Origin: Cyanophora paradoxa CCMP329
Taxonomy: Eukaryota > Plantae > Glaucophyta
DNA: 64,000 bases
Assembly (NCBI GenBank): GCA_004431415.1
Contig: QPMI01000010.1
Span: 124,001 to 188,000, forward strand
Direction of reading: 5' to 3'
A model generated the notes under the pieces. It was not told where the DNA came from. It ran no database searches and saw only the letters and a program-made list of their open reading frames with translations. Position numbers and translations under genes: made by a program. Of the stretch, positions 43,636-62,600 are shown piece after piece (position 1 is the stretch's first letter; each line of letters begins with the position of its first letter).

Positions 43636-46600
43636 TCACGGCCAGTCTGCGGCGAGCGCCGGGGCGTCAGCGGCCCGAGAGGGATGCATGCAGGGGGAGG
43701 GGAGCGGCGCCGCGCACAGAAGCCGGGCCCCGGCGTCTCCTCGCCGCCCTTTTCGACGCGCTTTGTGGCCATACTGAACGCCGGCCCGCTGGGGTCCGCG
43801 GGGGTACCGTACGCCCCCGGCCTGCCGTGACGTCACGACCATGCAGAGCATTTAAGAGACAAACAGGCGGAGCGTACCCCGGAGTGGGATCGGTCTGGCC
43901 CTCGGGATGGCGCCCCGTAATGCTGTACGCGACGCCGGGGTCCAGGGGCCAAAGGTACTGGCCGGGCCCTGGGCCGGTGTCGCCCGCGTTCGGGTCCGGC
44001 GAGCGGGCCCGGAGCGTGTACGAGGGGCCGCCCGGCGCCGCCGGCTGCCCGTACGCTCCCGGCCCCGGCACCACCTCCTTCGACGCCGGGTCGCCCGCCT
44101 TGCCCACGATCGTGTAGCTGGGCGTCGTCGGCCGCTCCTGCGGGTTGTACGCCCCTGCGCCCCCGCCGTCGGCCCTCCCGCGGCGGCGCTGGCGGCCCTG
44201 CGCCCCGCACCTGGCCCCGGCGACACGTCCGATGCGCCGCCATCCGCGTGCCGCGCCGCCATCGAGAACGCCGGCCCGCCCGGCGCCGCCGGCTGCCCGT
44301 ACGCTCCGGGCCCCGGCACCACCTCCTTCGACGCCGGTCGCCCGCCTTGCCCACGATCGTGTAGCTGGGCGTCGTCGGCCGCTCCTGCGGGTTGTACGCC
44401 CCTGCGCCCTGCCGTCGGCCCTCCCGTGGCGGCGCTGGCGGCCCTGCGCCCCGCACCTGGCCCGGCGACACGTCCGATGCGCCGCCATCCGCGTGCCGCG
44501 CCGCCATCGAGAACGCCGGCCCGCCCGGCGCCGCCGGCTGCCCGTACGCTCCGGGCCCGGCACGACCTCCTTCGACGCCGGGTCGCCCGCCTTGCCCACG
44601 ATCGTGTAGCTGGGCGTCGTCGGCCGCTCCTGCGGGTTATACGCCCCTGCGCCCCCGCCGTCGGCCCTCCCGCGGCGGCGCTGGCGGCCCTGCGCCCCGC
44701 ACCTGGCCCGGCGACACGTCCGATGCGCCGCCATCCGCGTGCCGCGCCGCCATCGAGAACGCCGGCCCGCCGGCGCCGCCGGCTGCCCGTACGCTCCGGG
44801 CCCCGGCACCACCTCCTTCGACGCCGGGTCGCCCGCCTTGCCCACGATCGTGTAGCTGGGCGTCGTCGGCCGCTCCTGCGGGTTATACGCCCTGCGCCCC
44901 GCCGTCGGCCCTCCCGCGGCGGCGCTGGCGGCCCTGCGCCCCGCACCTGGCCCCGGCGACACGTCCGATGCGCCGCCATCCGCGTGCCGCGCCGCCATCG
45001 AGAACGCCGGCCCGCCCGGCGCCGCCGGCTGCCCGTACGCTCCGGGCCCGGCACGACCTCCTTCGACGCCGGGTCGCCCGCCTTGCCCACGATCGTGTAG
45101 CTGGGCGTCGTCGGCCGCTCCTGCGGGTTGTACGCCCTGCGCCCTGCCGTCGGCCCTCCCGTGGCGGCGCTGGCGGCCCTGCGCCCGCACCTGGCCCCGG
45201 CGACACGTCCGATGCGCCGCCATCCGCGTGCCGCGCCGCCATCGAGAACGCCGGCCCGCCGGCGCCGCCGGCTGCCCGTACGCTCCCGGCCCCGGCACCA
45301 CCTCCTTCGACGCCGGGTCGCCCGCCTTGCCCACGATCGTGTAGCTGGGCGTCGTCGGCCGCTCCTGCGGGTTGTACGCCCTGCGCCCCGCCGTCGGCCC
45401 TCCGCGGCGGCGCTGGCGGCCCTGCGCCCGCACCTGGCCCCGGCGACACGTCCGATGCGCCGCCATCCGCGTGCCGCGCCGCCATCGAGAACGCCGGCCC
45501 GCCCGGCGCCGCCGGCTGCCCGTACGCTCCCGGCCCCGGCACCACCTCCTTCGACGCCGGGTCGCCCGCCTTGCCCACGATCGTGTAGCTGGGCGTCGTC
45601 GGCCGCTCCTGCGGGTTGTACGCCCCTGCGCCCCCGCCGTCGGCCCTCCCGCGGCGGCGCTGGCGGCCCTGCGCCCCGCACCTGGCCCCGGCGACACGTC
45701 CGATGCGCCGCCATCCGCGTGCCGCGCCGCCATCGAGAACGCCGGCCCGCCCGGCGCCGCCGGCTGCCCGTACGCTCCGGCCCCGGCACCACCTCCTTCG
45801 ACGCCGGGTCGCCCGCCTTGCCCACGATCGTGTAGCTGGGCGTCGTCGGCCGCTCCTGCGGGTTGTACGCCCCTGCGCCCCCGCCGTCGGCCCTCCCGCG
45901 GCGGCGCTGGCGGCCCTGCGCCCCGCACCTGGCCCCGGCGACACGTCCGATGCGCCGCCATCCGCGTGCCGCGCCGCCATCGAGAACGCCGGCCCGCCCG
46001 GCGCCGCCGGCTGCCCGTACGCTCCGGGCCCCGGCACGACCTCCTTCGACGCCGGGTCGCCCGCCTTGCCCACGATCGTGTAGCTGGGCGTCGTCGGCCG
46101 CTCCTGCGGGTTGTACGCCCCTGCGCCCCTGCCGTCGGCCCTCCCGTGGCGGCGCTGGCGGCCCTGCGCCCCGCACCTGGCCCGGCGACACGTCCGATGC
46201 GCCGCCATCCGCGTGCCGCGCCGCCATCGAGAACGCCGGCCCGCCCGGCGCCGCCGGCTGCCCGTACGCTCCGGGCCCCGGCACCACCTCCTTCGACGCC
46301 GGGTCGCCCGCCTTGCCCACGATCGTGTAGCTGGGCGTCGTCGGCCGCTCCTGCGGGTTGTACGCCCCTGCGCCCCTGCCGTCGGCCCTCCCGTGGCGGC
46401 GCTGGCGGCCCTGCGCCCCGCACCTGGCCCCGGCGACACGTCCGATGCGCCGCCATCCGCGTGCCGCGCCGCCATCGAGAACGCCGGCCCGCCCGGCGCC
46501 GCCGGCTGCCCGTACGCTCCGGGCCCGGCACGACCTCCTTCGACGCCGGGTCGCCCGCCTTGCCCACGATCGTGTAGCTGGGCGTCGTCGGCCGCTCCTG

Positions 46601-49600
46601 CGGGTTGTACGCCCCTGCGCCCCTGCCGTCGGCCCTCCCGTGGCGGCGCTGGCGGCCCTGCGCCCCGCACCTGGCCCCGGCGACACGTCCGATGCGCCGC
46701 CATCCGCGTGCCGCGCCGCCATCGAGAACGCCGGCCCGCCCGGCGCCGCCGGCTGCCCGTACGCTCCGGGCCCGGCACCACCTCCTTCGACGCCGGGTCG
46801 CCCGCCTTGCCCACGATCGTGTAGCTGGGCGTCGTCGGCCGCTCCTGCGGGTTGTACGCCCCTGCGCCCCTGCCGTCGGCCCTCCCGTGGCGGCGCTGGC
46901 GGCCCTGCGCCCCGCACCTGGCCCCGGCGACACGTCCGATGCGCCGCCATCCGCGTGCCGCGCCGCCATCGAGAACGCCGGCCCGCCCGGCGCCGCCGGC
47001 TGCCCGTACGCTCCGGGCCCCGGCACCACCTCCTTCGACGCCGGGTCGCCCGCCTTGCCCACGATCGTGTAGCTGGGCGTCGTCGGCCGCTCCTGCGGGT
47101 TGTACGCCCCTGCGCCCCTGCCGTCGGCCCTCCCGTGGCGGCGCTGGCGGCCCTGCGCCCCGCACCTGGCCCCGGCGACACGTCCGATGCGCCGCCATCC
47201 GCGTGCCGCGCCGCCATCGAGAACGCCGGCCCGCCGGCGCCGCCGGCTGCCCGTACGCTCCCGGCCCGGCACCACCTCCTTCGACGCCGGGTCGCCCGCC
47301 TTGCCCACGATCGTGTAGCTGGGCGTCGTCGGCCGCTCCTGCGGGTTGTACGCCCCTGCGCCCCCGCCGTCGGCCCTCCCGCGGCGGCGCTGGCGGCCCT
47401 GCGCCCCGCACCTGGCCCCGGCGACACGTCCGATGCGCCGCCATCCGCGTGCCGCGCCGCCATCGAGAACGCCGGCCCGCCCGGCGCCGCCGGCTGCCCG
47501 TACGCTCCCGGCCCCGGCACCACCTCCTTCGACGCCGGGTCGCCCGCCTTGCCCACGATCGTGTAGCTGGGCGTCGTCGGCCGCTCCTGCGGGTTGTACG
47601 CCCCTGCGCCCCTGCCGTCGGCCCTCCCGTGGCGGCGCTGGCGGCCCTGCGCCCCGCACCTGGCCCCGGCGACACGTCCGATGCGCCGCCATCCGCGTGC
47701 CGCGCCGCCATCGAGAACGCCGGCCCGCCCGGCGCCGCCGGCTGCCCGTACGCTCCGGGCCCCGGCACCACCTCCTTCGACGCCGGGTCGCCCGCCTTGC
47801 CCACGATCGTGTAGCTGGGCGTCGTCGGCCGCTCCTGCGGGTTGTACGCCCCTGCGCCCCTGCCGTCGGCCCTCCCGTGGCGGCGCTGGCGGCCCTGCGC
47901 CCCGCACCTGGCCCCGGCGACACGTCCGATGCGCCGCCATCCGCGTGCCGCGCCGCCATCGAGAACGCCGGCCCGCCCGGCGCCGCCGGCTGCCCGTACG
48001 CTCCGGGCCCCGGCACCACCTCCTTCGACGCCGGGTCGCCCGCCTTGCCCACGATCGTGTAGCTGGGCGTCGTCGGCCGCTCCTGCGGGTTGTACGCCCC
48101 TGCGCCCCGCCGTCGGCCCTCCCGCGGCGGCGCTGGCGGCCCTGCGCCCGCACCTGGCCCCGGCGACACGTCCGATGCGCCGCCATCCGCGTGCCGCGCC
48201 GCCATCGAGAACGCCGGCCCGCCCGGCGCCGCCGGCTGCCCGTACGCTCCCGGCCCCGGCACCACCTCCTTCGACGCCGGGTCGCCCGCCTTGCCCACGA
48301 TCGTGTAGCTGGGCGTCGTCGGCCGCTCCTGCGGGTTGTACGCCCCTGCACCCCCGCCGTCGGCCCTCCCGCGGCGGCGCTGGCGGCCCTGCGCCCGCAC
48401 CTGGCCCGGCGACACGTCCGATGCGCCGCCATCCGCGTGCCGCGCCGCCATCGAGAACGCCGGCCCGCCCGGCGCCGCCGGCTGCCCGTACGCTCCGGGC
48501 CCGGCACCACCTCCTTCGACGCCGGGTCGCCCGCCTTGCCACGATCGTGTAGCTGGGCGTCGTCGGCCGCTCCTGCGGGTTGTACGCCCCTGCGCCCCCG
48601 CCGTCGGCCCTCCTCGGCGGCGCTGGCGGCCCTGCGCCCGCACCTGGCCCCGGCGACACGTCCGATGCGCCGCCATCCGCGTGCCGCGCCGCCATCGAGA
48701 ACGCCGGCCCGCCCGGCGCCGCCGGCTGCCCGTACGCTCCCGGCCCGGCACGACCTCCTTCGACGCCGGGTCGCCCGCCTTGCCCACGATCGTGTAGCTG
48801 GGCGTCGTCGGCCGCTCCTGCGGGTTGTACGCCCCTGCGCCCCCGCCGTCGGCCCTCCCGCGGCGGCGCTGGCGGCCCTGCGCCCCGCACCTGGCCCCGG
48901 CGACACGTCCGATGCGCCGCCATCCGCGTGCCGCGCCGCCATCGAGTACGCCGGCCCGCCCGGCGCCGCCGGCTGCCCGTACGCTCCGGGCCCCGGCACC
49001 ACCTCCTTCGACGCCGGGTCGCCCGCCTTGCCCACGATCGTGTAGCTGGGCGTCGTCGGCCGCTCCTGCGGGTTGTACGCCCCTGCGCCCCCGCCGTCGG
49101 CCCTCCCGCGGCGGCGCTGGCGGCCCTGCGCCCCGCACCTGGCCCCGGCGACACGTCCGATGCGCCGCCATCTGCGTGCCGCGCCGCCATCGAGAACGCC
49201 GGCCCGCCCGGCGCCGCCGGCTGCCCGTACGCTCCGGGCCCCGGCACGACCTCCTTCGACGCCGGATCGCCCGCCTTGCCCACGATCGTGTAGCTGGGCG
49301 TCGTCGGCCGCTCCTGCGGGTTGTACGCCCCTGCGCCCCCGCCGTCGGCCCTCCCGCGGCGGCGCTGGCGGCCCTGCGCCCCGCACCTGGCCCCGGCGAC
49401 ACGTCCGATGCGCCGCCATCCGCATGCCGCGCCGCCATCGAGAACGCCGGCCCGCCCGGCGCCGCCGGCTGCCCGTACGCTCCGGGCCCCGGCACGACCT
49501 CCTTCGACGCCGGGTCGCCCGCCTTGCCCACGAGAGTGAACGCCGGAGCCCCGCTCTTGTCGTTCGGGTTGTACGCCCCTGCGCCCAGCCGCGTCAACGG

Positions 49601-52600
49601 AAATCCTCGACAGCTCTTTTCTCGCCCAAGCCACGTACCCGGCCCAGGCGACAGATCCGTCGACCCCGTGTCGACGTATCGCGCCGCCATCGAGTACGCC
49701 GGCCCGCCCGGCGCCGCCGGCTGCCCGTACGCTCCGGGCCCCGGCACGACCTCCTTCGACGCCGGGTCGCCCGCCTTGCCCACGAGAGTGAACGCCGGAG
49801 CCCCGCTCTTGTCGTTCGGGTTGTACGCCCCTGCGCCCAGCCGCGTCAACGGAAATCCCCAACAGCTCTCTACCCGCCGCAGCCACGTACCCGGCCCAGG
49901 CGACAGATCCGTCGACCCCGTGTCGACGTATCGCGCCGCCATCGAGTACGCGGGCCCGCCCGGCGCCGCCGGCTGCCCGTACGCTCCGGGCCCCGGCACG
50001 ACCTCCTTCGACGCCGGGTCGCCCGCCTTGCCCACGAGGGTGAACGCCGGAGCCCCGCTCTTGTCGTTCGGGTTGTACGCCCCTGCGCCCAGCCGCGTCA
50101 ACGGAAATCCCCAACAGCTCTCTACCCGCCGCAGCTGCGTACCCGGCCCAGGCGACAGATCCGTCGACCCCGTGTCGACGTACCGCGCCGCCATCGAGTA
50201 CGCCGGCCCGCCCGGTGCCGCCGGCTGCCCGTACGCTCCGGGCCCCGGCACGACCTCCTTCGACGCCGGGTCGCCCGCCTTGCCCACGAGAGTGAACGCC
50301 GGAGCCCCGCTCTTGTCGTTCGGGTTGTACGCCCCTGCGCCCAGCCGCGTCAACGGAATTGCCCAACCGCTCTTTCCCCGCCGCAGCTGCGCACCCGGCC
50401 CAGGCGACAGATCCGTCGACCCCGTGTCGACGTATCGCGCCGCCATCGAGTACGCCGGCCCGCCCGGCGCCGCCGGCTGCCCGTACGCTCCGGGCCCCGG
50501 CACGACCTCCTTCGACGCCGGGTCGCCCGCCTTGCCCACGAGAGTGAACGCCGGAGCCCCGCTCTTGTCGTTCGGGTTGTACGCCCCTGCGCCCAGCCGC
50601 GTCAACGGAATTGTCCAACAGCTCTCTCCCCGCCGCAGCCGCGTACCCGGCCCAGGCGACAGATCCGTCGACCCCGTGTCGACGTATCGCGCCGCCATCG
50701 AGTACGCCGGCCCGCCCGGCGCCGCCGGCTGCCCGTACGCCCCCGGCCCTGGCACGACCTCCTTCGACGCCGGGTCGCCCGCCTTGCCCACGAGAGTGAA
50801 CGCCGGAGCCCCGCTCTTGTCGTTCGGGTTGTACGCCCCTGCGCCCAGCCGCGTCAACGGAAATCCCCAACAGCTCTTTTCCCGCCGCAGCTGCGTACCC
50901 GGCCCAGGCGACAGATCCGTCGACCCCGTGTCGACGTATCGCGCCGCCATCGAGTACGCCGGCCCGCCAGGCGCCGCCGGCTGCCCGTACGCTCCGGGCC
51001 CCGGCACGACCTCCTTCGACGCCGGGTCGCCCGCCTTGCCCACGAGAGTGAACGCCGGAGCCCCGCTCTTGTCATTCGGGTTGTACGCCCCTGCGCCCAG
51101 CCGCGTCAACGGAAATCCCCAACAGCTCTCTCCCCGCCGCAGCTGCGTACCCGGCCCAGGCGACAGATCCGTCGACCCCGTGTCGACGTATCGCGCCGCC
51201 ATCGAGTACGCCGGCCCGCCCGGCGCCGCCGGCTGCCCGTACGCCCCCGGCCCTGGCACGACCTCCTTCGACGCCGGGTCGCCCGCCTTGCCCACGAGAG
51301 TGAACGCCGGAGCCCCGCTCTTGTCGTTCGGGTTGTACGCCCCTGCGCCCAGCCGCGTCAACGGAAATCCTCGACAGCTCTCTCCCCGCCGCAGCTGCGT
51401 ACCCGGCCCAGGCGACAGATCCGTCGACCCCGTGTCGACGTATCGCGCCGCCATCGAGTACGCCGGCCCGCCAGGCGCGGCTGGCTGCCCGTACGCTCCG
51501 GGCCCCGGCACGACCTCCTTCGACGCCGGGTCGCCCGCCTTGCCCACAAGTGTGTAGGCCGGAGTCCCTGGCCTCTGGACGGGGTTGTACGCCCCTGCGC
51601 CCAGCCGCGTTAACGGACTTGCCCAACCGCTCTTTCCCCGCCGCAGCCGCGTACCCGGCCCAGGCGACAGATCCGTCGACCCCGTGTCGACGTATCGCGC
51701 CGCCATCGAGTACGCCGGCCCGCCCGGCGCCGCCGGCTGCCCGTACGCCCCCGGCCCTGGCACGACCTCCTTCGACGCCGGGTCGCCCGCCTTGCCCACG
51801 AGAGTGAACGCCGGAGCCCCGCTCTTGTCGTTCGGGTTGTACGCCCCTGCGCCCAGCCGCGTCAACGGAAATCCTCGACAGCTCTTTTCCCGCCGCAGCT
51901 GCGTACCCGGCCCAGGCGACAGATCCGTCGACCCCGTGTCGACGTATCGCGCCGCCATCGAGTACGCCGGCCCGCCAGGCGCCGCCGGCTGCCCGTACGC
52001 TCCGGGCCCCGGCACGACCTCCTTCGACGCCGGGTCGCCCGCCTTGCCCACGAGAGTGAACGCCGGAGCCCCGCTCTTGTCGTTCGGGTTGTACGCCCCT
52101 GCGCCCAGCCGCGTCAACGGAAATCCCCAACAGCTCTCTCCCCGCCGCAGCCACGTACCCGGCCCAGGCGACAGATCCGTCGACCCCGTGTCGACGTATC
52201 GCGCCGCCATCGAGTACGCCGGCCCGCCCGGCGCCGCCGGCTGCCCGTACGCCCCCGGCCCCGGCACGACCTCCTTCGACGCCGGGTCGCCCGCCTTGCC
52301 CACGAGAGTGAACGCCGGAGCCCCGCTCTTGTCGTTCGGGTTGTACGCCCCTGCGCCCAGCCGCGTCAACGGAAATCCTCGACAGCTCTCTACCCGCCGC
52401 AGCTGCGTACCCGGCCCAGGCGACAGATCCGTCGACCCCGTGTCGACGTATCGCGCCGCCATCGAGTACGCCGGCCCGCCAGGCGCGGCTGGCTGCCCGT
52501 ACGCTCCGGGCCCCGGCACGACCTCCTTCGACGCCGGGTCGCCCGCCTTGCCCACGAGAGTGAACGCCGGAGCCCCGCTCTTGTCGTTCGGGTTGTACGC

Positions 52601-55600
52601 CCCTGCGCCCAGCCGCGTCAACGGAAATCCTCGACAGCTCTCTACCCGCCGCAGCTGCGTACCCGGCCCAGGCGACAGATCCGTCGACCCCGTGTCGACG
52701 TATCGCGCCGCCATCGAGTACGCCGGCCCGCCCGGCGCCGCCGGCTGCCCGTACGCCCCCGGCCCCGGCACGACCTCCTTCGACGCCGGGTCGCCCGCCT
52801 TGCCCACGAGAGTGAACGCCGGAGCCCCGCTCTTGTCATTCGGGTTGTACGCCCCTGCGCCCAGCCGCGTCAACGGAAATCCCCAACAGCTCTCTCCCCG
52901 CCGCAGCTGCGTACCCGGCCCAGGCGACAGATCCGTCGACCCCGTGTCGACGTATCGCGCCGCCATCGAGTACGCCGGCCCGCCCGGCGCCGCCGGCTGC
53001 CCGTACGCCCCCGGCCCTGGCACGACCTCCTTCGACGCCGGGTCGCCCGCCTTGCCCACGAGAGTGAACGCCGGAGCCCCGCTCTTGTCGTTCGGGTTGT
53101 ACGCCCCTGCGCCCAGCCGCGTCAACGCAAATCCTCGACAGCTCTCTCCCCGCCGCAGCTGCGTACCCGGCCCAGGCGACAGATCCGTCGACCCCGTGTC
53201 GACGTATCGCGCCGCCATCGAGTACGCCGGCCCGCCAGGCGGCGCCGGCTGCCCGTACGCTCCGGGCCCCGGCACGACCTCCTTCGACGCCGGGTCGCCC
53301 GCCTTGCCCACAAGTGTGTAGGCCGGAGTCCCTGGCCTCTGGACGGGGTTGTACGCCCCTGCGCCCAGCCGCGTTAACGGACTTGCCCAACCGCTCTTTC
53401 CCCGCCGCAGCCGCGTACCCGGCCCAGGCGACAGATCCGTCGACCCCGTGTCGACGTATCGCGCCGCCATCGAGTACGCCGGCCCGCCAGGCGCCGCCGG
53501 CTGCCCGTACGCCCCCGGCCCTGGCACGACCTCCTTCGACGCCGGGTCGCCCGCCTTGCCCACGAGAGTGAATGCCGGAGCCCCGCTCTTGTCGTTCGGG
53601 TTGTACGCCCCTGCGCCCAGCCGCGTCAACGGAAATCCTCGACAGCTCTCTCCCCGCCGCAGCTGCGTACCCGGCCCAGGCGACAGATCCGTCGACCCCG
53701 TGTCGACGTATCGCGCCGCCATCGAGTACGCCGGCCCGCCCGGCGCCGCCGGCTGCCCGTACGCCCCCGGCCCCGGCACGACCTCCTTCGACGCCGGGTC
53801 GCCCGCCTTGCCCACGAGAGTGAACGCCGGAGCCCCGCTCTTGTCGTTCGGGTTGTACGCCCCTGCGCCCAGCCGCGTCAACGGAAATCCCCAACAGCTC
53901 TCTCCCCGCCGCAGCTGCGTACCCGGCCCAGGCGACAGATCCGTCGACCCCGTGTCGACGTATCGCGCCGCCATCGAGTACGCCGGCCCGCCCGGCGCCG
54001 CCGGCTGCCCGTACGCCCCCGGCCCTGGCACGACCTCCTTCGACGCCGGGTCGCCCGCCTTGCCCACGAGAGTGAACGCCGGAGCCCCGCTCTTGTCGTT
54101 CGGGTTGTACGCCCCTGCGCCCAGCCGCGTCAACGGAAATCCTCGACAGCTCTCTCCCCGCCGCAGCTGCGTACCCGGCCCAGGCGACAGATCCGTCGAC
54201 CCCGTGTCGACGTATCGCGCCGCCATCGAGTACGCCGGCCCGCCCGGCGCCGCCGGCTGCCCGTACGCTCCGGGCCCCGGCACGACCTCCTTCGACGCCG
54301 GGTCGCCCGCCTTGCCCACGAGAGTGAACGCCGGAGCCCCGCTCTTGTCGTTCGGGTTGTACGCCCCTGCGCCCAGCCGCGTCAACGGAAATCCCCAACA
54401 GCTCTCTCCCCGCCGCAGCCACGTACCCGGCCCAGGCGACAGATCCGTCGACCCGTGTCGACGTATCGCGCCGCCATCGAGTACGCGGGCCCGCCCGGCG
54501 CCGCCGGCTGCCCGTACGCCCCGGCCCCGGCACGACCTCCTTCGACGCCGGGTCGCCCGCCTTGCCCACGAGAGTGAACGCCGGAGCCCCGCTCTTGTCG
54601 TTCGGGTTGTACGCCCCTGCGCCCAGCCGCGTCAACGGAAATCCTCGACAGCTCTCTACCCGCCGCAGCTGCGTACCCGGCCCAGGCGACAGATCCGTCG
54701 ACCCCGTGTCGACGTATCGCGCCGCCATCGAGTACGCCGGCCCGCCAGGCGCGGCTGGCTGCCCGTACGCTCCGGGCCCCGGCACGACCTCCTTCGACGC
54801 CGGGTCGCCCGCCTTGCCCACGAGAGTGAACGCCGGAGCCCCGCTCTTGTCGTTCGGGTTGTACGCCCCTGCGCCCAGCCGCGTCAACGGAATTGTCCAA
54901 CAGCTCTCTCTCCGCCGCAGCCACGTACCCGGCCCAGGCGACAGATCCGTCGACCCCGTGTCGACGTATCGCGCCGCCATCGAGTACGCCGGCCCGCCAG
55001 GCGCCGCCGGCTGCCCGTACGCTCCGGGCCCCGGCACGACCTCCTTCGACGCCGGGTCGCCCGCCTTGCCCACGAGAGTGAACGCCGGAGCCCCGCTCTT
55101 GTCGTTCGGGTTGTACGCCCCTGCGGCCCATCGTTAGACCGCCATTCAACCCCCCGTCGATGCCAGCGCGCGCTGACCTGGCCCTGGTCCCGTGTCGCTG
55201 GCGCCTGGGTCGGCCGTCCTGTGCGCCATGCTGAACGCGGGCCCGGGCGACGGCGCTCCGACCGCGTATGCGCCGGGGCCCGGCACGACCTCCTTCGACG
55301 CTGGGTCCGGCGCCTTTCCGAGCAGAGTGTACGCGGGCGTGCCGGGCCTCTCGAGCGGGTTGTACGCCCCTGCGGCCCATCGTTAGACTGCGATTCAATC
55401 CTCCGTCGATGCCAGCTCGCGCTGACCTGGCCCTGGTCCAGTGTCGCTGGCGCCTGTGTCAGCCGTCCTGTGCGCCATGCTGAACGCGGGCCCGGGCGAC
55501 GGCGCTCCGACCGCGTATGCGCCGGGGCCCGGCACGACCTCCTTCGACGCTGGGTCCGGCGCCTTTCCGAGCAGAGTGTACGCGGGCGTGCCGGGCCTCT

Positions 55601-58600
55601 CGAGCGGGTTGTACGCCCCTGCGGCCCATCGTTAGACTGCGATTCAATCCTCCGTCGATGCCAGCTCGCGCTGACCTGGCCCTGGTCCCGTGTCGCTGGC
55701 GCCTGGGTCGGCCGTCCTGTGCGCCATGCTGAACGCGGGCCCGGGCGACGGCGCTCCGACCGCGTATGCGCCGGGGCCCGGCACGACCTCCTTCGACGCT
55801 GGGTCCGGCGCCTTTCCGAGCAGAGTGTACGCGGGCGTGCCGGGCCTCTCGAGCGGGTTGTACGCCCCTGCGGCCCATCGTTAGACTGCGATTCAACCCT
55901 CCGTCGATGCCAGCGCGCGCTGACCTGGCCCTGGTCCCGTGTCGCTGGCGCCTGGGTCGGCCGTCCTGTGCGCCATGCTGAACGCGGGCCCGGGCGACGG
56001 CGCTCCGACCGCGTATGCGCCGGGGCCCGGTACGACCTCCTTCGACGCCGGGTCGCCCGCCTTGCCCACGAGAGTGAACGCCGGAGCCCCGCTCTTGTCG
56101 TTCGGGTTGTACGCCCCTGCGGCGTCGGCGTAGCCGCTTTCGACGACGCGCAGCAAAAGCGGGGCACGCGAGAAGCCGGCCCGTACCTGGCCCTGGCCCC
56201 GGCTCCTGCGCCCCTTGCACCGGAGACTTCCCGCGCATCGTGTAAGCTGGCGTGTCCGGCCCCATTCGCGTGTCGTAGGCCCCTGCACGCTGTGAGGGCG
56301 AGCTCTGACGCCAGCGCCTGCGGGAGCTGTGGGGTACCTGGCCCGGGGGACGCGTCTGCGGAGGCGGCGGCGGGGTCGGAGTGCCTCCCGATGAGCGTGA
56401 AGGCAGGTACGCGGGGCGCCGGCGCCGGCCTGCGCGCGCGCGCAAGTCAGACCGCGCGGCGCGGCGCGGCGCGGCGGTAGGCGGCTCGCAGAGCGGAACG
56501 CACGCGTATGCGCCGGGGCCCGGGCCCGTGTCGGTACCCCCCGGGTGCGCGGTCTTCGGGCGCATGCTGAACGCCGGGCCGCCGGCGCGGACGCCCTCCG
56601 AATTGTACGCGCCTGCGGCGGAGAGGGGGCTTGGGAGCGCCCGGGCGGATCGGCGAGGCCTGCAGAGCCGGCCCCCCGCACCTGGTCCGGGCGAGGTGTC
56701 GGCTGGGGCCGACTTGGCCGACGTAGGCCGCCGCCCGATCAGCGAGAAGGCGGGGGTAGACCCGGGGCGCGCCGGCGTGTACGCCCCTGCGCGCGCGCCC
56801 GTCAGCCGACGGCGAGGCGGGCCGGACCCGAAGTGGCGTGCGCATGCACCCGGGCCCGGGCCTCCGTCCATCGAGGCGCGGAGAGAGGCCGGCCGGCCGC
56901 CGCCCATGCTGAAAGCTGGGCCGCTGGAGCCGCCCGGCGCGTAGGCGCCCGGCCCCGGCCCCTCGTCCGAGCCCGCGCTGCGGTATGTGCGCCCCACGAG
57001 CGAGTACGCCGGCGACTGCGGGCGGCTCTTCGAGTCGTAGGAGCCGGGACCAGGGCTGACGGCCGGGGGTACAGTCGGAGATCGAATGGGAAGAGAAGCG
57101 AAGGGGTACGCACCCATAGTAGACGGTCGAGCCGGCCGAGTCGGGGCGGTACCCCCGGCGGCGGGCCATGGAGTACATGGGGCCACCCAGCGGGAGGCGA
57201 AGATCGTACGCTCCTGGGGGTACGGCATTACGGCGTGACGGACGAGAACGGCCCCGCGGGGATTCGAACCCGGGCCGGGCGTGGTCCCGTCGCGGTCGCC
57301 GCCGGCGCCGCCGGTCCGGCCCTGCAGGCTGAAGCCCTTCTTCGGAGAGCCCGCCGCCGCAGGGTTGTACGCGCCTGCCGAGAAGAGATCAGTCCCTCGG
57401 GGGTACGCGGCGCCGGCGGGGGTACTGCGGCACCGGGACCAGGGCCGCCGTCCTCCTGTTCGATTCGGCCGTTGGCGGACTGGGGGCGGTTGCGGATCGT
57501 GTACGAGGGCCCCCCTACCCCCCCGTTGGGCCTGCGCGAAGGCACCTCAGGAGAGATCCTCTGCAGGGAGGGGGTACGTGCGCAAACGCACCCGTAGGCC
57601 CCCGGGCCCGGATCGCCGTCCTCCTGGGAGCCCTGGGGGTACTTCCCCGGCATGCTCCAGGCCGGTGCCGCTTCCTGCCGGACTCTTGTTAGCTCTGTCA
57701 AGCTTTAATAGCGCTTCTTGTTATGAGCTTATTAGCTTATTAGCTTGTTGAAGAGCGGACCTTATCAGGGAACAGGTTCTTGCGGGGCTCGGGGGCCGCC
57801 GCCCCGCGCCGCGCCCCAGCGCTCGCCGACTGCGGCCGGCGGGCCGGCCCGCCCGTGCCGGCGCCCGGGCCGGCCTGCCGCGCCGCGCGTGGCGGGTTGT
57901 ACTCCTTTCGCCCGTCCGAGGCCCCGCGGTTCGCGATGGGGCCCGGCCTGCCCGACCGGAACGACCCGCCCCGGCTCGCTCGCGCCCGCGGGGAGGAAGG
58001 GTGGGGAAGGGCGGGCAAGGACGCACCGGTCGCGCCCGGGGATTCGCCCCCGCTCCCGCCCCGCCGCTGGGGTCGCCTGCGCCGCCGCCGGCGGCGGCGA
58101 CGCGGCGCGCGGCGGCCCCGACGCGCGCTTGCGCCACGGCGTCTGCCGCCTCTGGCCCGTACTCCACTGCGAAGGAGGTAGCCCGCGATCGATCAGAAAA
58201 GGGGGAGGTACGACGGAGCGAGAGGGAGGCCCGCGCACCCGATGTGACGGCCGCGACCGCGACGACGGGCCGGCCCGCTCCCGCGCCCGAAGCTGCGGGC
58301 GAGCCGCGCCGCCGCGTCGCCCTGCGGCGCCCGCCCGCCGTAGAGCCGCTGCAGCTCCTGCTTGAGGCGGCCCACGGCAGACGCCGAAGACCCGGCGGAG
58401 GAGGACGAGGAGACGGAGGCCGTGTCCGAGAAGCGGCGGCCGGCCGCCGAGGGCGGCCGCGGGCCCGCCGCGTGGCCGGGCGCCCCTCCCCCTCCTCCCC
58501 CGCCCTTGGCAGCCTCCAGGGTCTTCATGAGGCGGGCCTTGAGGCCCGGCGGCGAGGCGAGCTGCGCCCGCGCGTGCGCGAAGCCCGCCGCGGCGAGCTC

Positions 58601-59400
58601 GGCGAACACGGCCTGCGCGTGGAATGAGCGACCGGGGGGTACGCGAAGCAACGCGGGGCGCGCCGCGGCGTTGGGGTCCGCCTCGGTGCGGCAGACGGTG
58701 GAGCCTGAGCCGGCGTAGGACGGGGCGTTGGAGGAGCGGCCCGAGGCGCTGGAGCGCGCGTCCTCTCCCTCGTCCTCCTCGGCCGGACCCGAGGCGAGCC
58801 GCTCGTCGAGGAGGGCGGCCGCGGCGCCGGCGGCCTGGGCGAGCCCGCGGTCGGCGGCCGGCGAGGGCGGGAAGCTGTACTCCACCGCGTGCATGCGCGA
58901 CCCGCGCTGGAAGGCGCGCCTGCGCGGGGCGGGCGGGTTGGGTGGCGCTGGCGGGCGGGCGGGCGCGGCGGCGGACCAGAGGTCGATGTGGCGGAGCTCG
59001 CGACCCTGTATCACCCGCGCGCGGACGCCGGTCCACGACGGGAACCACGAGGTGACCGAGTCCTGCGGGCGCCTTGAGCGGCCGGCGCTCGGAATTCGCA
59101 CCGCGGGGCTGCGCTCGGAGGCACCTTGAAGTAGGGGTCGCAGGCGACGATGCGCACGCGGGAGCGGAGAGGCTGCTGGTCGTTGAGCGCCTTGATCCCC
59201 TCGGTCGCCGCCGTGAGCACCACGCGCGAGGCCGGGCCGGTGCAGACGCCGGAGAAAGTCTGCGCCGGGTGGCCCGGCCTGGAGAGGATCGCCGTCCAGG
59301 CTCCCACGCCCGCTCCAGCATCGCTCGAGCACACGCCAGCGACGTGGATCACCGCGAGAGGCAGCGTGGCTGAGCCCGAGCCTGCAGGCTGGTCCGCCAT
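43636..59400 (-). CDS. Giant SHIPPO-repeat (ODF3/STPG-like, PGPGxY) protein, roughly 4000 aa, with an apparent N-terminal inactive RNase H domain
   Basis: About 110 repeats of 32 aa with pattern PGPGAY...PA[FY][ST][MLI]. Last exon ends ...TPGPGFYWP-stop at 43636. ATG at 59400 begins an RNase HI-like domain. The linker splice path at about 57950-58350 is ambiguous. Confidence 0.8.
43963..49530 (-). repeat. Tandem block A: 22 units of about 248 bp (192-nt exon + 56-nt GT-AG intron)
   Basis: Period 244-248 bp. First intron at 44155-44210 (GTGCGG...GCGCAG on the minus strand). Exon peptide GAYNPQERPTTPSYTIVG...SDVSPGP. Confidence 0.95.
49531..55120 (-). repeat. Tandem block B: 22 units of 252 bp (192-nt exon + 60-nt in-frame GT-AG intron)
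   Basis: Exact 252-bp period over most of the block. Intron e.g. 49579-49638 with TTGAC branch site. Exon peptide GAYNPNDKSGAPAFTLVG...TDLSPGP. Confidence 0.95.
55121..56116 (-). repeat. Tandem block C: 4 units of 249 bp (192-nt exon + 57-nt stop-containing intron)
   Basis: Introns GTCAGC...CTAAC...CCGCAG starting at 55121, 55370, 55619 and 55868. Exon peptide GAYNPLERPGTPAYTLLG...SDTGPGP. Confidence 0.93.
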
Positions 59401-59670
59401 CGTGGCGGCGGGCCCAGGCGGCTCTCCCAATGCACTCAGACACTAGGATGCGCGGTGCTCAGTTCAGAACCGGTCAGAGATCCCTCCAGCGGGGTCCAGC
59501 GCCTCAGCTCCGGGCCACGCGCTCACTAAGCGAGGCCGTCCAGCGAGCAGCTGATCTCGTGCCACCTGCTTCCAGAAAAAGATTGCACCAGGGCCGTCTG
59601 TCGGGTTGAGCAGGCCACGACTTGAGCCTCTGTACCCGTCCTTGCAAAGAAAAAAAGCACCGGCCTAGCG

Positions 59671-62600
59671 ATGGCGGACAGCGACGACGAAGGAGCGGAG
59701 CAGGTAGCGGCACAGGCGAACAAGGAGCGGATCTTCTATGGCTCCATCGAACTTCAGGAGCGGCAACGAAGACAGGAGGCGAGCGTCCACGCGAGCTTCC
59801 CGCGCGCTTCGACGCATCCGCGGGACGCGTTCGTTGACTGGCGGGCGCGACGCAGGCCGCTGGTGGAGGGGGCGATGGCGAGGGCGTGTCGCCCCCGCCG
59901 GCCGCCTTCGACCAGCAGATGGCCGCAGCGAGGGCAGCGGGCAACATCAACTACGCCCCCGCAGGTCCGATGGCGCGATGCCGCGGCCGTCCCTCCCGCG
60001 GCCGACCGACCGCGCTTCTCTCTCAGAGGCCGAGACCATGGAGCTTGACTTGAAGAGCCAGGCGAGCATAGAGAAGCACAAGATGCTCATGGACCAGCTG
60101 GATCAGCAGAAGCGCGCGCGATCGCTGTACGTGCCTACGAACGACGCGGAAGTGCGGAAGCGGCTGCGGGAGCTAGAAGAGCCGATGACGCTCTTCGGAG
60201 AGGGGGTGCGACCGCCCGCCGAGCCCCGCTCGCACGCAGCGGCTGACGCGGCGGCAGCCCGGGGAGCGGAGAGACCGTCTCAAGGCCATTCTTGTCCGGA
60301 TGCACCCGGAGGCGGCCGCGCAGATCACGGGGGCGGTCGGCATCGCGCCGCCGCCGCCCGGCAAGGGCCGCGCGCAGGAGATTGAACCCAAAGAGCCCAC
60401 CGTGAGCGCCGGCCCGGGCGCCCGCCCGCCCGCCCGCTGCCGCCCCGCCCACCGCCCCGCCCTCAGAAGGTCGAGCTTTTCTACACGCCCGGCACGGAGG
60501 ATCTCAAGCGCGCGCGTGTGGAGATTGCGAACTGGTCCCTGCCTCGGTACCCTCCCCTCCTTCCCCCCCCCCCCTCGCCCTCCCCCTCCCCTTCCCCCCC
60601 GCTCTGCTCAGCGCGGATCGCAGCGCGCAGAAGCGGATCGTCAAGCGGCGGAAAGAGCTGGAGACCCCGGGGTACTACGTGGAGGAGAAGGAGCGCTACA
60701 CGCAGCTGCACGCCCAGCTCAAGGTGCGTCCGTCGGCCCCGTACCCCCCTTTCTCCTGGACCCAAGGCTGACTGGGCGGGCCCGGCCCCGCGCAGCACAT
60801 GTCGAACATATCCAGCCAGATCGGGGACGACCGTGCGCTCCCTCTACGCTCCCGCTCACTCCCTCTGCCCCTCTCACTCTCTTTCTTCGCAGGCCCGCTC
60901 TCCTGCTGCGCCCTCTCGCCGGACGACCGCCTCGTCCTCACGGGCTCCTGGTCCACACTCATCAAGGTGCGGGGGGGGCGGGGCTAGGCGCCTGGGGCGA
61001 GGCCAGCCAGAGGGGGCACGGGTCCGGGCGTCCGTCCAGGCCACGGGGTGGAGGGGCTAGAGGGGACGCCCGCCGCCCGCCCGTCTCCAGGGGGGGGGTT
61101 ACTCTCCGCTCTCCCGCCGCCCTTCTTCTCACCTTAGAACCGCCTCGCCTAGCTCCCTTCTTCTTCTTCTTCTCACCTAGCGCTGCGCTGCGCTGCGCTC
61201 GCCTGCCGCCGTCGCCCTTCTCCTTCTACTCACCTTGGACCCGCCTCGCCCCGCCCCGCCCCGCCCCGCCCAGGTATGGGACCGTGACACGGTGGAGCGG
61301 AAGGCGACCTTCAAGGGTACGCGCGGCGACCCTCTCCCTCGCCCCCTCTCTCTTTCGCCTCTGACTCTCTTTCCTTCCGCCTCCCCACAGGCCACAAGGA
61401 GCGCGTGATCGACGTCGCCTGGCACCCCTCGGCCTCCTCCTCCTCCATAGAAGCCGACCCGGCCGCTATGATGGACACGGGGGAGGGCGCCCCCTCCACG
61501 GTGGCCTTCGCCTCGTCCTCGGCGGACGGAACGGCTCGACTCTGGAGCCTGGGCAAGACCACGGACATCGGGGTCCTCGAGGGCCACGCCGACCGCCTCG
61601 GCTCGCTGGGCTTCCACCCCTCCGGCCGCTTCCTCGCCACCGCCAGGCGCGCTTGTACCCCGCCCTTCTTTCCTCCCCCCCTCCCTCTCAGCTTCTTCTT
61701 CTTCGTTCGCAGCTTCGACAAGACGTGGCGCCTGTGGGACGTGGAGACGCGGAAGGAGCTGCTGCTCCAGGAGGGACACTCCCGCGCCGTCTACGGCATC
61801 GCCTTCCACCCGGACGGATCCCTCGCCGCCTCCAGGTTGCTCCTGTTCTCCTGTACCCCTCTTGGGTCCGGCGCCCCGAGGGCTCAGCGGCGCCGCGCCC
61901 CGCAGCGGCCTGGACTCGATCGTCCGATGCTGGGACCTCCGCACGGGCAAGTCCGTCCTGACTCTCGAGGCGCGTACCCCCCCGTTCCGCGCCTGTACCC
62001 TTCCTCGCCCGGCCCGAGCCGTCGGTCGCGCAGGGCCACGTCAAGCAGGTCATCTCTGTCGACTTCAACCCGATGGGGTACCCCCTCGGCCTTCCCCCCC
62101 CCCGCCGCTGCAAGCTCGCCCCCGACGCGACGCGTACCCCCCCGCAGGTGGTTGCTGGCCAGCGCCTCGGATGACCACACCGTACGCATCTGGGACCTCC
62201 GCAAGCAGGTGCCGCCTGTACCCCCCGCTGCCGCACCCTGTACCCCGGCTGACGTTCGGGGGTACGCAGAAAGCGAAGTACACGATCGCGGCGCACACGG
62301 CCCTCATCTCGAAGGTCAAGTTCCAGGTTCGGGTCCCCGCGGCCGCCCTTTCCGCGCCCCGGCTAGCTAAGGGCCCGCCCGCCCAGCCCGAGCACGGCCA
62401 GTACCTCGCGTCCTCCTCCTACGACGGGACCGTGAAGACCTGGTACCCTTCTTTCTTCCCCCCTCCTCCTCCCGGCCCCGCCCGGCCCGAGGTCCTTCCG
62501 CAGGGCGCCCGATCACCTTTACGACAATTGGACCCTCCTCCGGACCCTGGCCGGGCACGAAGGGAAGGCGCGTACCCCCCCCCCCGCTCTCTGCCCGCTT

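What the first reader, a model, noticed from the sequence alone, without database searches (positions are those of the whole stretch)
58815..59400. Catalytically dead RNase HI domain apparently fused to a giant microtubule-binding SHIPPO array
Seen: the first three exons splice to AVIHVAGVCSSDAGAGVGAWTAILSRPGHPAQTFSGVCTGPASRVVLTAATEGIKAL...VRIVACDPYFKDSVTSWFPSW...GRELRHIDLWRAFQRGSRMHAVEYSFPPSPAADRGLAQAAGAA. By eye this aligns colinearly over about 140 aa with E. coli RNase HI (VEIFTDGSC..GGYGAIL..KTFS..NRMELMAAIVALEAL..ILSTDSQYV..ITQWIHNW..VKNVDLW..H.IKWEWVKGH..NERCDELA). The catalytic positions are replaced: D10>A, E48>V, D70>C, H124>P, D134>A. The structural residues are kept, the frame is intact and the introns are spliceosomal, which suggests a maintained pseudoenzyme. 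Same-strand exons continue without an obvious intergenic gap into KNLFPDK|EAAPAWSMPGK and the first PGPGAY repeat. Established: SHIPPO-repeat proteins coat axonemal microtubules. Inference: a nuclease-dead RNase H fold tethered to flagellar or cytoskeletal microtubules, acting as a nucleic-acid-binding or scaffolding head. I do not know of this architecture.
Basis: partly seen in the sequence, partly recalled or inferred. Interest (0 to 1): 0.9.

Follow-up and report, generated by a model that had tools for sequence, protein, structure and literature searches.

The report
Dead RNase H heads microtubule-repeat giant
An alga (probably Cyanophora paradoxa) expresses a spliced gene that starts with a bacterial-type RNase H domain lacking all its cutting residues and very probably runs on into about 100 microtubule-binding repeats, a pairing I found described nowhere and most likely a structural flagellar or cytoskeletal protein, not an enzyme.

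Summary
The domain is real. Three minus-strand exons (59400-58809) each match a profile of 112 active bacterial RNase HI proteins in consecutive register; exons 2 and 3 match without gaps. RNA contigs from three runs (two studies) splice both introns. D10, E48, D70, H124 and D134 are all replaced. N16, the T43-N44-N45 motif, W90, N100 and K122 are lost too, while the hydrophobic core is kept, so nucleic-acid binding is doubtful.

The fusion to the SHIPPO (PGPGxY) array is likely (about 0.8) but not shown by one molecule. As assembled, the GC-rich linker is out of frame. RNA restores two missing bases in exon 4; a second shift in exon 5 is inferred from codon usage only. RNA contigs tile the region at similar depth except for gaps of 26 and about 150 nt. 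No ATG lies between 58527 and 57654, and the only later Met sits inside a repeat motif.

No close homologue was found among 1.84 billion protein representatives. Dead RNase HI domains exist in bacteria, but I found none joined to SHIPPO repeats. Best reading: a roughly 3,900-residue microtubule-lining filament with a folded pseudo-nuclease head. Function is untested, and it is seen in one species only. The scan had not reported this pairing on other DNA.

The parts
59125..59400 (-). Exon 1 (92 codons from ATG 59400): strands 1-3, helix A and strand 4 of an RNase HI fold; D10>A, E48>V, D70>C
   Evidence: RNA contigs cover it and start at 59610-59615
59063..59124 (-). Intron 1, GT-AG, 62 nt
   Evidence: joint shown in X1, X3, X4
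58977..59062 (-). Exon 2: helices B-C, basic protrusion and start of helix D; W81, W85, D102, L103 kept; W90, N100 lost
58920..58976 (-). Intron 2, GT-AG, 57 nt; splits the W104 codon
   Evidence: joint shown in X1, X3, X4
58664..58919 (-). Exon 3: end of the RNase H domain (to about 58809; H124>P, D134>A), then acidic and Ser-rich linker
   Evidence: RNA contigs reach 58745 and 58704
58613..58663 (-). Intron 3, GC-AG, 51 nt, in frame
   Evidence: inferred: X1 record 3 piece ends at 58610 with 82 nt left; depth arithmetic gives 2.18 against 2.18 observed; joint not displayed
58239..58612 (-). Exon 4: linker with four short predicted helices and a Gly/Ser-rich stretch; the assembly lacks two bases seen in one RNA contig (58273, 58285); in-frame ATG at 58528
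   Evidence: no fold match
58027..58166 (-). Exon 5 (modelled): Ala/Pro-rich linker, 85% GC; codon usage places a frame shift near 58131, probably an assembly error
   Evidence: RNA support only for about 35 nt at its 5' end, inferred from X4 record 11
57761..57947 (-). Exon 6: linker ending in KNLFPDK
   Evidence: codon score 39.5 in one frame; RNA contig on 57900-57760
57675..57760 (-). Intron 6, GT-AG, 86 nt, unusually AT-rich (43% GC) with one ATTAAA at 57709
   Evidence: splicing inferred from X1 record 2 (piece stops at 57760; depth arithmetic 2.54 against 2.54 observed)
57592..57674 (-). Exon 7: half repeat (PAWSM motif at the usual 18-residue distance from PGP) and the first PGPGAY
43636..57531 (-). 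SHIPPO / PG-rich repeat array: about 48 tandem exon+intron units of 244-252 nt, each coding two 32-residue repeats, plus about ten unique repeats; roughly 95-110 PGPGxY motifs
   Evidence: four introns in the unique part spliced in RNA contigs; 3' end read by eye

Best explanation
One gene of a GC-rich, intron-dense alga (Cyanophora paradoxa by the scan's notes) encodes a protein of about 3,900 residues: a folded but catalytically dead bacterial-type RNase HI domain (about residues 15-158), a mostly disordered linker of about 280 residues, and about 100 PGPGxY repeats. The repeats bind successive tubulins along the outer groove of flagellar or flagellar-root microtubules, as Tetrahymena STPG1A and ODF3L do, so the chain acts as a long stabilising strap (about 0.4-0.9 micrometre if fully bound at 4-8 nm per repeat). 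The head has kept its hydrophobic core and lost both its metal site and most of its hybrid-binding surface, so it most likely works as a compact protein-protein or anchoring module at one end of the strap. Shown: the fold, the loss of catalytic residues, splicing and expression, the repeats. Inferred: a single transcript (about 0.8), microtubule binding, and the head's anchoring role.
For: Fold: (alignment-assisted model pLDDT 90 and E. coli RNase HI top in Foldseek, not independent). Core kept, polar surface lost: 14/19 conserved hydrophobic positions identical or similar against 9/26 polar ones, Fisher p=0.016; R46 and D102 both kept. One gene: RNA contigs at depth 3.3-6.9 tile head, linker and repeats with two gaps; no ATG between 58527 and 57654; the Met at 57653 is inside a repeat motif; a codon model blind to the RNA predicts the exon-4 shift that RNA shows and, with one more shift, makes all exon phases join; the assembly drops 1-2 bases in G/C runs in at least ten array units. 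PGPGxY is a microtubule-binding motif (PMC10105768); SHIPPO proteins also line non-axonemal microtubules in Giardia (10.1101/361105).
Against: No single RNA contig joins head to repeats; 105 nt of exon 5 and 47 nt of exon 6 have no displayed RNA cover. The exon-5 shift is unverified, and the exon-4 correction rests on one contig. No orthologue was found, so selection on the head cannot be measured. Per-exon SHIPPO scores stay under Pfam's cut-off, and the 32-residue period is shorter than in the solved STPG1A. No localisation data.
Confidence: 0.5

Rival explanations
1. One fused protein, but the dead RNase H head still binds nucleic acid (RNA:DNA hybrid or duplex RNA) and tethers it to microtubules.
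For: W81, W85, C13 and four arginines in the basic-protrusion region are kept; net charge +3. Catalytically dead RNase HI mutants can still bind hybrids (my own knowledge).
Against: N16, T43, N44, N45, W90, N100 and K122 are lost; T43 at the start of helix A, the phosphate-pocket site (PMC4132731, for the location), is proline. The dead bacterial domains P0001, P0004 and P0007 keep these residues, this one does not.
Confidence: 0.13
2. One fused protein, but the head is a passenger: an RNase HI gene of bacterial type that died and was captured as extra 5' exons, now drifting and doing little.
For: Only 36 of 136 positions match the consensus and 44 of 65 near-invariant positions are changed; the end branch is very long; no orthologue found; the scan's notes list many dead-domain fusions in this genome (unchecked).
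Against: Open frame, no gap in exons 2-3 relative to the profile, two gained introns, GC3 of 0.88-0.96 and preferential retention of the core point to long selection for a folded domain.
Confidence: 0.19
3. Two products: a short gene or short isoform (dead RNase H plus linker, ending at the stop at 57765 or at a poly(A) site in the AT-rich intron 6) and a separately started SHIPPO protein.
For: The assembled frames do not join; with only the RNA-seen correction, the frame stops at 57765. Intron 6 is 43% GC with an ATTAAA. Genes in this genome are packed end to end (PMC6704402). RNA gaps lie in exactly this zone.
Against: Exon 6 is spliced to the first repeat in one contig (inferred), codes strongly in the frame that runs into the repeats, and has no upstream ATG nearer than 58528. 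The gaps are 77-92% GC with no promoter-like stretch, and the DNA run also drops to zero at 57942-58075.
Confidence: 0.18

Closest known systems
SHIPPO / sperm-tail PG-rich repeat proteins (Pfam PF07004; ODF3, ODF3L, Tetrahymena STPG1A and STPG2)
   Same: Tandem PGPGxY motifs with a PxF/YS/T-hydrophobic motif between them; STPG1A and STPG2 also carry a non-repeat domain (PMC10105768).
   Different: About 100 motifs against 5-12 in the Tetrahymena proteins; 32-residue period; built from tandem exon+intron duplications; N-terminal pseudo-RNase H head not reported in my searches.
Bacterial RNase HI (rnhA; PF00075, NCBIfam NF001236)
   Same: Same order and spacing of elements including the basic protrusion; G11, C13, W22, R46, Y73, W81, W85, D102-L103-W104 kept.
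   Different: All four DEDD carboxylates and H124 replaced, substrate-contact residues lost, score far under the family cut-off (17.4 against 160 bits for exon 1), spliced eukaryotic gene.
Degenerate bacterial RNase HI domains (P0001, a metagenome singleton; second domains of 291-293 aa tandem RNase HI proteins, one labelled Chloroflexota: P0002, P0004-P0010)
   Same: RNase HI fold with an incomplete catalytic set. P0001 shares E48>V and D134>A and is the best hit (E 4e-5, 41%).
   Different: Most keep the T43-N44-N45 motif and N100; they stand alone or behind an active domain; none has repeats. Common descent with P0001 is not shown (unstarred long-branch pairing; no family found).
Degenerate RNase H folds used as scaffolds (Prp8 RNase H-like domain, retroviral RT connection domain; from my own knowledge, not tested)
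   Same: RNase H fold reused as a structural module.
   Different: Those act in nucleic-acid machines; this one is attached to a predicted microtubule-binding array.

Membership tests
RNase HI (type 1 RNase H) | RNase H fold with colinear strands 1-5 and helices A-E | tested here: met
   (independent of folding); for exon 1 only, alignment-assisted
RNase HI (type 1 RNase H) | DEDD carboxylates (D10, E48, D70, D134) and H124 | tested here: not met
   A, V, C, A and P; DEDD requirement from PMC9719913
RNase HI (type 1 RNase H) | Hybrid-binding surface (N16, T43, N44, N45, W81, W85, N100, basic protrusion) | tested here: not met
   only W81 and W85 kept; net charge +3 against mean +5.1; residue roles from my own knowledge
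RNase HI (type 1 RNase H) | Family score above curated cut-off | tested here: inconclusive
   exon by exon only: no Pfam hit, NF001236 17.4 bits against 160; joined domain not searched
RNase HI (type 1 RNase H) | Cleaves RNA in RNA:DNA hybrids | not testable with these tools
   needs an assay; predicted inactive
SHIPPO / PG-rich repeat proteins (PF07004) | Tandem PGPGxY motifs at regular spacing | tested here: met
   about 95 counted by pattern, 32-residue period
SHIPPO / PG-rich repeat proteins (PF07004) | Pfam score at or above 20 bits for the whole protein | tested here: inconclusive
   single exons give 8.9-19.8 bits; the whole spliced protein was not searched
SHIPPO / PG-rich repeat proteins (PF07004) | Binds the outer surface of microtubules | not testable with these tools
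   shown for STPG1A (PMC10105768), inferred here
Single RNase H-SHIPPO fusion protein | One transcript and one open frame from exon 1 to the repeats | tested here: inconclusive
   RNA tiling with two gaps, one shift RNA-supported and one inferred, no alternative ATG

The most novel reading that the evidence does not exclude
A nuclease-derived head that still grips RNA or RNA:DNA hybrids is strapped to flagellar or root microtubules by a near-micrometre repeat filament, giving a direct link between nucleic acids and the ciliary cytoskeleton.
Probability: 0.1. Interest if true: 0.85.

Novelty: new variant of a known kind. Interest (0 to 1): 0.52.

Why it matters
If the fusion holds, it is a clear case of a bacterial-type nucleic-acid enzyme recycled as a part of a cytoskeletal protein, and a PG-rich microtubule binder about ten times longer than the Tetrahymena ones described in PMC10105768. 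It predicts an RNase H-shaped density on glaucophyte doublets or flagellar roots, a handle for anyone assigning unknown densities there. It also shows how standard annotation misses such domains: the head has no Pfam hit per exon and the linker is broken by assembly errors. It does not yet touch an open mechanistic question, it is seen in one species, and dead-domain fusions look common in this genome.

Tried and rejected
Pfam and PHROGs on single exons of head and linker: nothing. Word-index homologue searches with exon 1 and with the exon 2-4 read-through: nothing; they see only proteins of 0.55-1.75 times the query length, so they say nothing on long fusions. Contig scans with exon 1, P0001 or their pair in metagenomes, genomes and viruses: nothing. 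Atlas on exon 2 plus intron plus exon 3 start: not recognised. I suspected a dsRNA-binding motif in exon 4-5; the exon-4 model is low confidence (pLDDT 60, pTM 0.20) and matched nothing, so I dropped it. The exon-1 tree is uninformative on the donor (end branch 10). P0003 (RHS protein) is a chance low-complexity hit. The PcRGLX hit on an intron read-through is an artefact. A retrotransposon source (the genome's LINEs carry RNase H by the scan's notes) could not be tested; no second RNase H lies in the window. Literature searches for SHIPPO with RNase H, and for inactive RNase H-like proteins on doublets, gave nothing relevant.

Full report
Setting. The window is GC-rich, gene-dense eukaryotic DNA with short introns. 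The scan's notes name the genome as Cyanophora paradoxa; I did not test this, but the features fit the published assembly, where places without Illumina cover were filled from the PacBio sequence (PMC6704402). The gene lies on the minus strand, head to head with a PRP4-like WD40 gene that starts at 59671; the RNA contigs of the two genes begin about 35 nt apart.

The observation. Both introns are skipped in contigs of runs X1, X3 and X4 (two studies; 'RNA' is the tool's guess, but they are spliced), and not in X8.

The fold, tested exon by exon. Exon 1 alone finds Thermus RNase HI first in the PDB (E 0.027), RNase H clusters in the Atlas (0.92-0.93), rnhA in NCBIfam (E 0.0025) and two Pfam RNase_H proteins among 1.84 billion representatives (E 4e-5 and 1e-4). 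On a profile of 112 active bacterial RNase HI proteins it scores 22.5 bits, against 5.1 for the best of 2000 shuffles. The exon-1 tail, exon 2 and the start of exon 3 each choose, independently and ungapped, registers 65, 77 and 106, which abut exactly; at those registers 5, 0 and 1 of 2000 shuffles reach the score. An AlphaFold model of exon 1 has pLDDT 90 and matches E. coli RNase HI, but it was built on an RNase H alignment and is not independent. The W22, D102-L103-W104 and H114 pattern is that of the bacterial enzymes; I had no eukaryotic or LINE sequences to compare, so the donor is open, and the tree is uninformative.

What is lost. D10>A, E48>V, D70>C, H124>P and D134>A are confirmed. 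The enzyme needs the DEDD set to hold its metals (PMC9719913), so it cannot cut. Of positions at least 85% conserved, 14 of 19 hydrophobic ones are identical or similar against 9 of 26 polar ones (p=0.016). This is the pattern of selection for a fold and not for the hybrid-binding face. Dead RNase HI domains are not unique: P0001 and the second domains of tandem bacterial RNase HI proteins lack catalytic residues as well, but most of them keep T43-N44-N45 and N100.

The array. From 57674 down to about 43636 lie about 48 tandem exon+intron units of 244-252 nt, each coding two 32-residue repeats, after about ten unique repeats. My pattern counts 95 PGPGxY motifs and misses damaged units. Single exons hit PF07004 at 8.9-19.8 bits. 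At least ten units have lost 1-2 bases in G/C runs, the usual long-read error.

Is it one gene? As assembled, no: the natural frames of exons 4, 5 and 6 do not join. Five lines say the breaks are assembly errors. (1) An RNA contig carries two extra C's at 58273 and 58285, which puts exon 4 in phase with exon 5. (2) A codon model trained on other exons and blind to the RNA predicts that shift, predicts one more near 58131, and then gives phases that join exons 4, 5, 6 and 7. (3) RNA contigs at depth 3.3-6.9 cover 59615-58704, 58743-58488, 58461-58132 and 57900-57434; the links across introns 3, 6 and 7 were not displayed but follow from contig lengths and bin depths (2.18 and 2.54 predicted and observed), and the link across intron 4 is inferred from 35 spare letters. 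The gaps are 26 nt and about 150 nt of 77-92% GC, and the DNA run also has zero depth at 57942-58075. (4) There is no ATG in any frame between 58527 and 57654. (5) The Met at 57653 is the internal Met of a repeat motif at the usual 18-residue distance from PGP, so translation starts further up. Against this, no molecule spans the whole, the second shift is unverified, and intron 6 is AT-rich with an ATTAAA, so a short isoform is possible. I put the fusion at about 0.8.

How it probably works. PGPGxY binds microtubules, and spacers let successive motifs bind successive tubulins along a protofilament (PMC10105768). SHIPPO proteins also sit on Giardia's disc and median body (10.1101/361105). About 100 motifs would make a strap of 0.4-0.9 micrometre (my arithmetic at 4-8 nm per repeat). 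The head, about 280 residues away through a linker with only short helices, most likely docks on another protein or caps the strap. Nucleic-acid binding is less likely, and a passenger role remains possible. All of this is inference.

Novelty. No close homologue of head or linker was found, and no paper joins SHIPPO repeats with RNase H. It is a new variant of the PG-rich repeat family with a new head. It is not an RNase HI family member in the enzymatic sense, because the defining residues were tested and are absent. The scan's own notes describe the array on this window (s1-554054) and another dead RNase H-like domain on a PIF1 helicase (s1-525255), neither checked beyond what is said here.

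Limits. Only contigs, not raw reads, were available, so strand, ends and expression level are not measured.

Noticed in passing
window:57675-57760 (-): Intron 6 is 43% GC in an 80% GC setting, with a doubled AAGCTAAT unit found nowhere else in the window and one ATTAAA. It lies exactly between linker and first repeat and could hold an alternative poly(A) site.
   Followed up: partly
window:58613-58663 (-): Probable GC-AG intron, 51 nt, in frame and without a stop, so retention would add 17 residues.
   Followed up: partly
window:59401-59670: 270-nt divergent spacer shared with a PRP4-like splicing factor gene (+ strand from 59671); RNA contigs of the two genes start about 35 nt apart, contig depth about 5 against 56-71.
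   Followed up: partly
window:44028-56123 (-): The array has three homogenised blocks with different intron sequences (units of 249, 252 and 248 nt) and two alternating repeat types per exon. In the 252-nt block the 60-nt intron has no stop, giving long read-through ORFs. At least ten units carry 1-2 nt losses in G/C runs.
   Followed up: partly
L001:404-907 (P0001): A stand-alone metagenomic RNase HI with D10>G, E48>V, H124>Q and D134>A but an intact T43-N44-N45 motif and N100: a candidate dead hybrid-binding protein; singleton cluster.
   Followed up: partly
P0002, P0004-P0010: Tandem RNase HI proteins of 291-293 aa (one labelled Chloroflexota) with an intact first domain and a degenerate second domain.
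   Followed up: no
window:42730-43490 (+): A short convergent gene ends about 150-200 nt from the array's stop codon; by eye it looks like a histone-fold protein of the CBF/NF-YB type (not tested).
   Followed up: no
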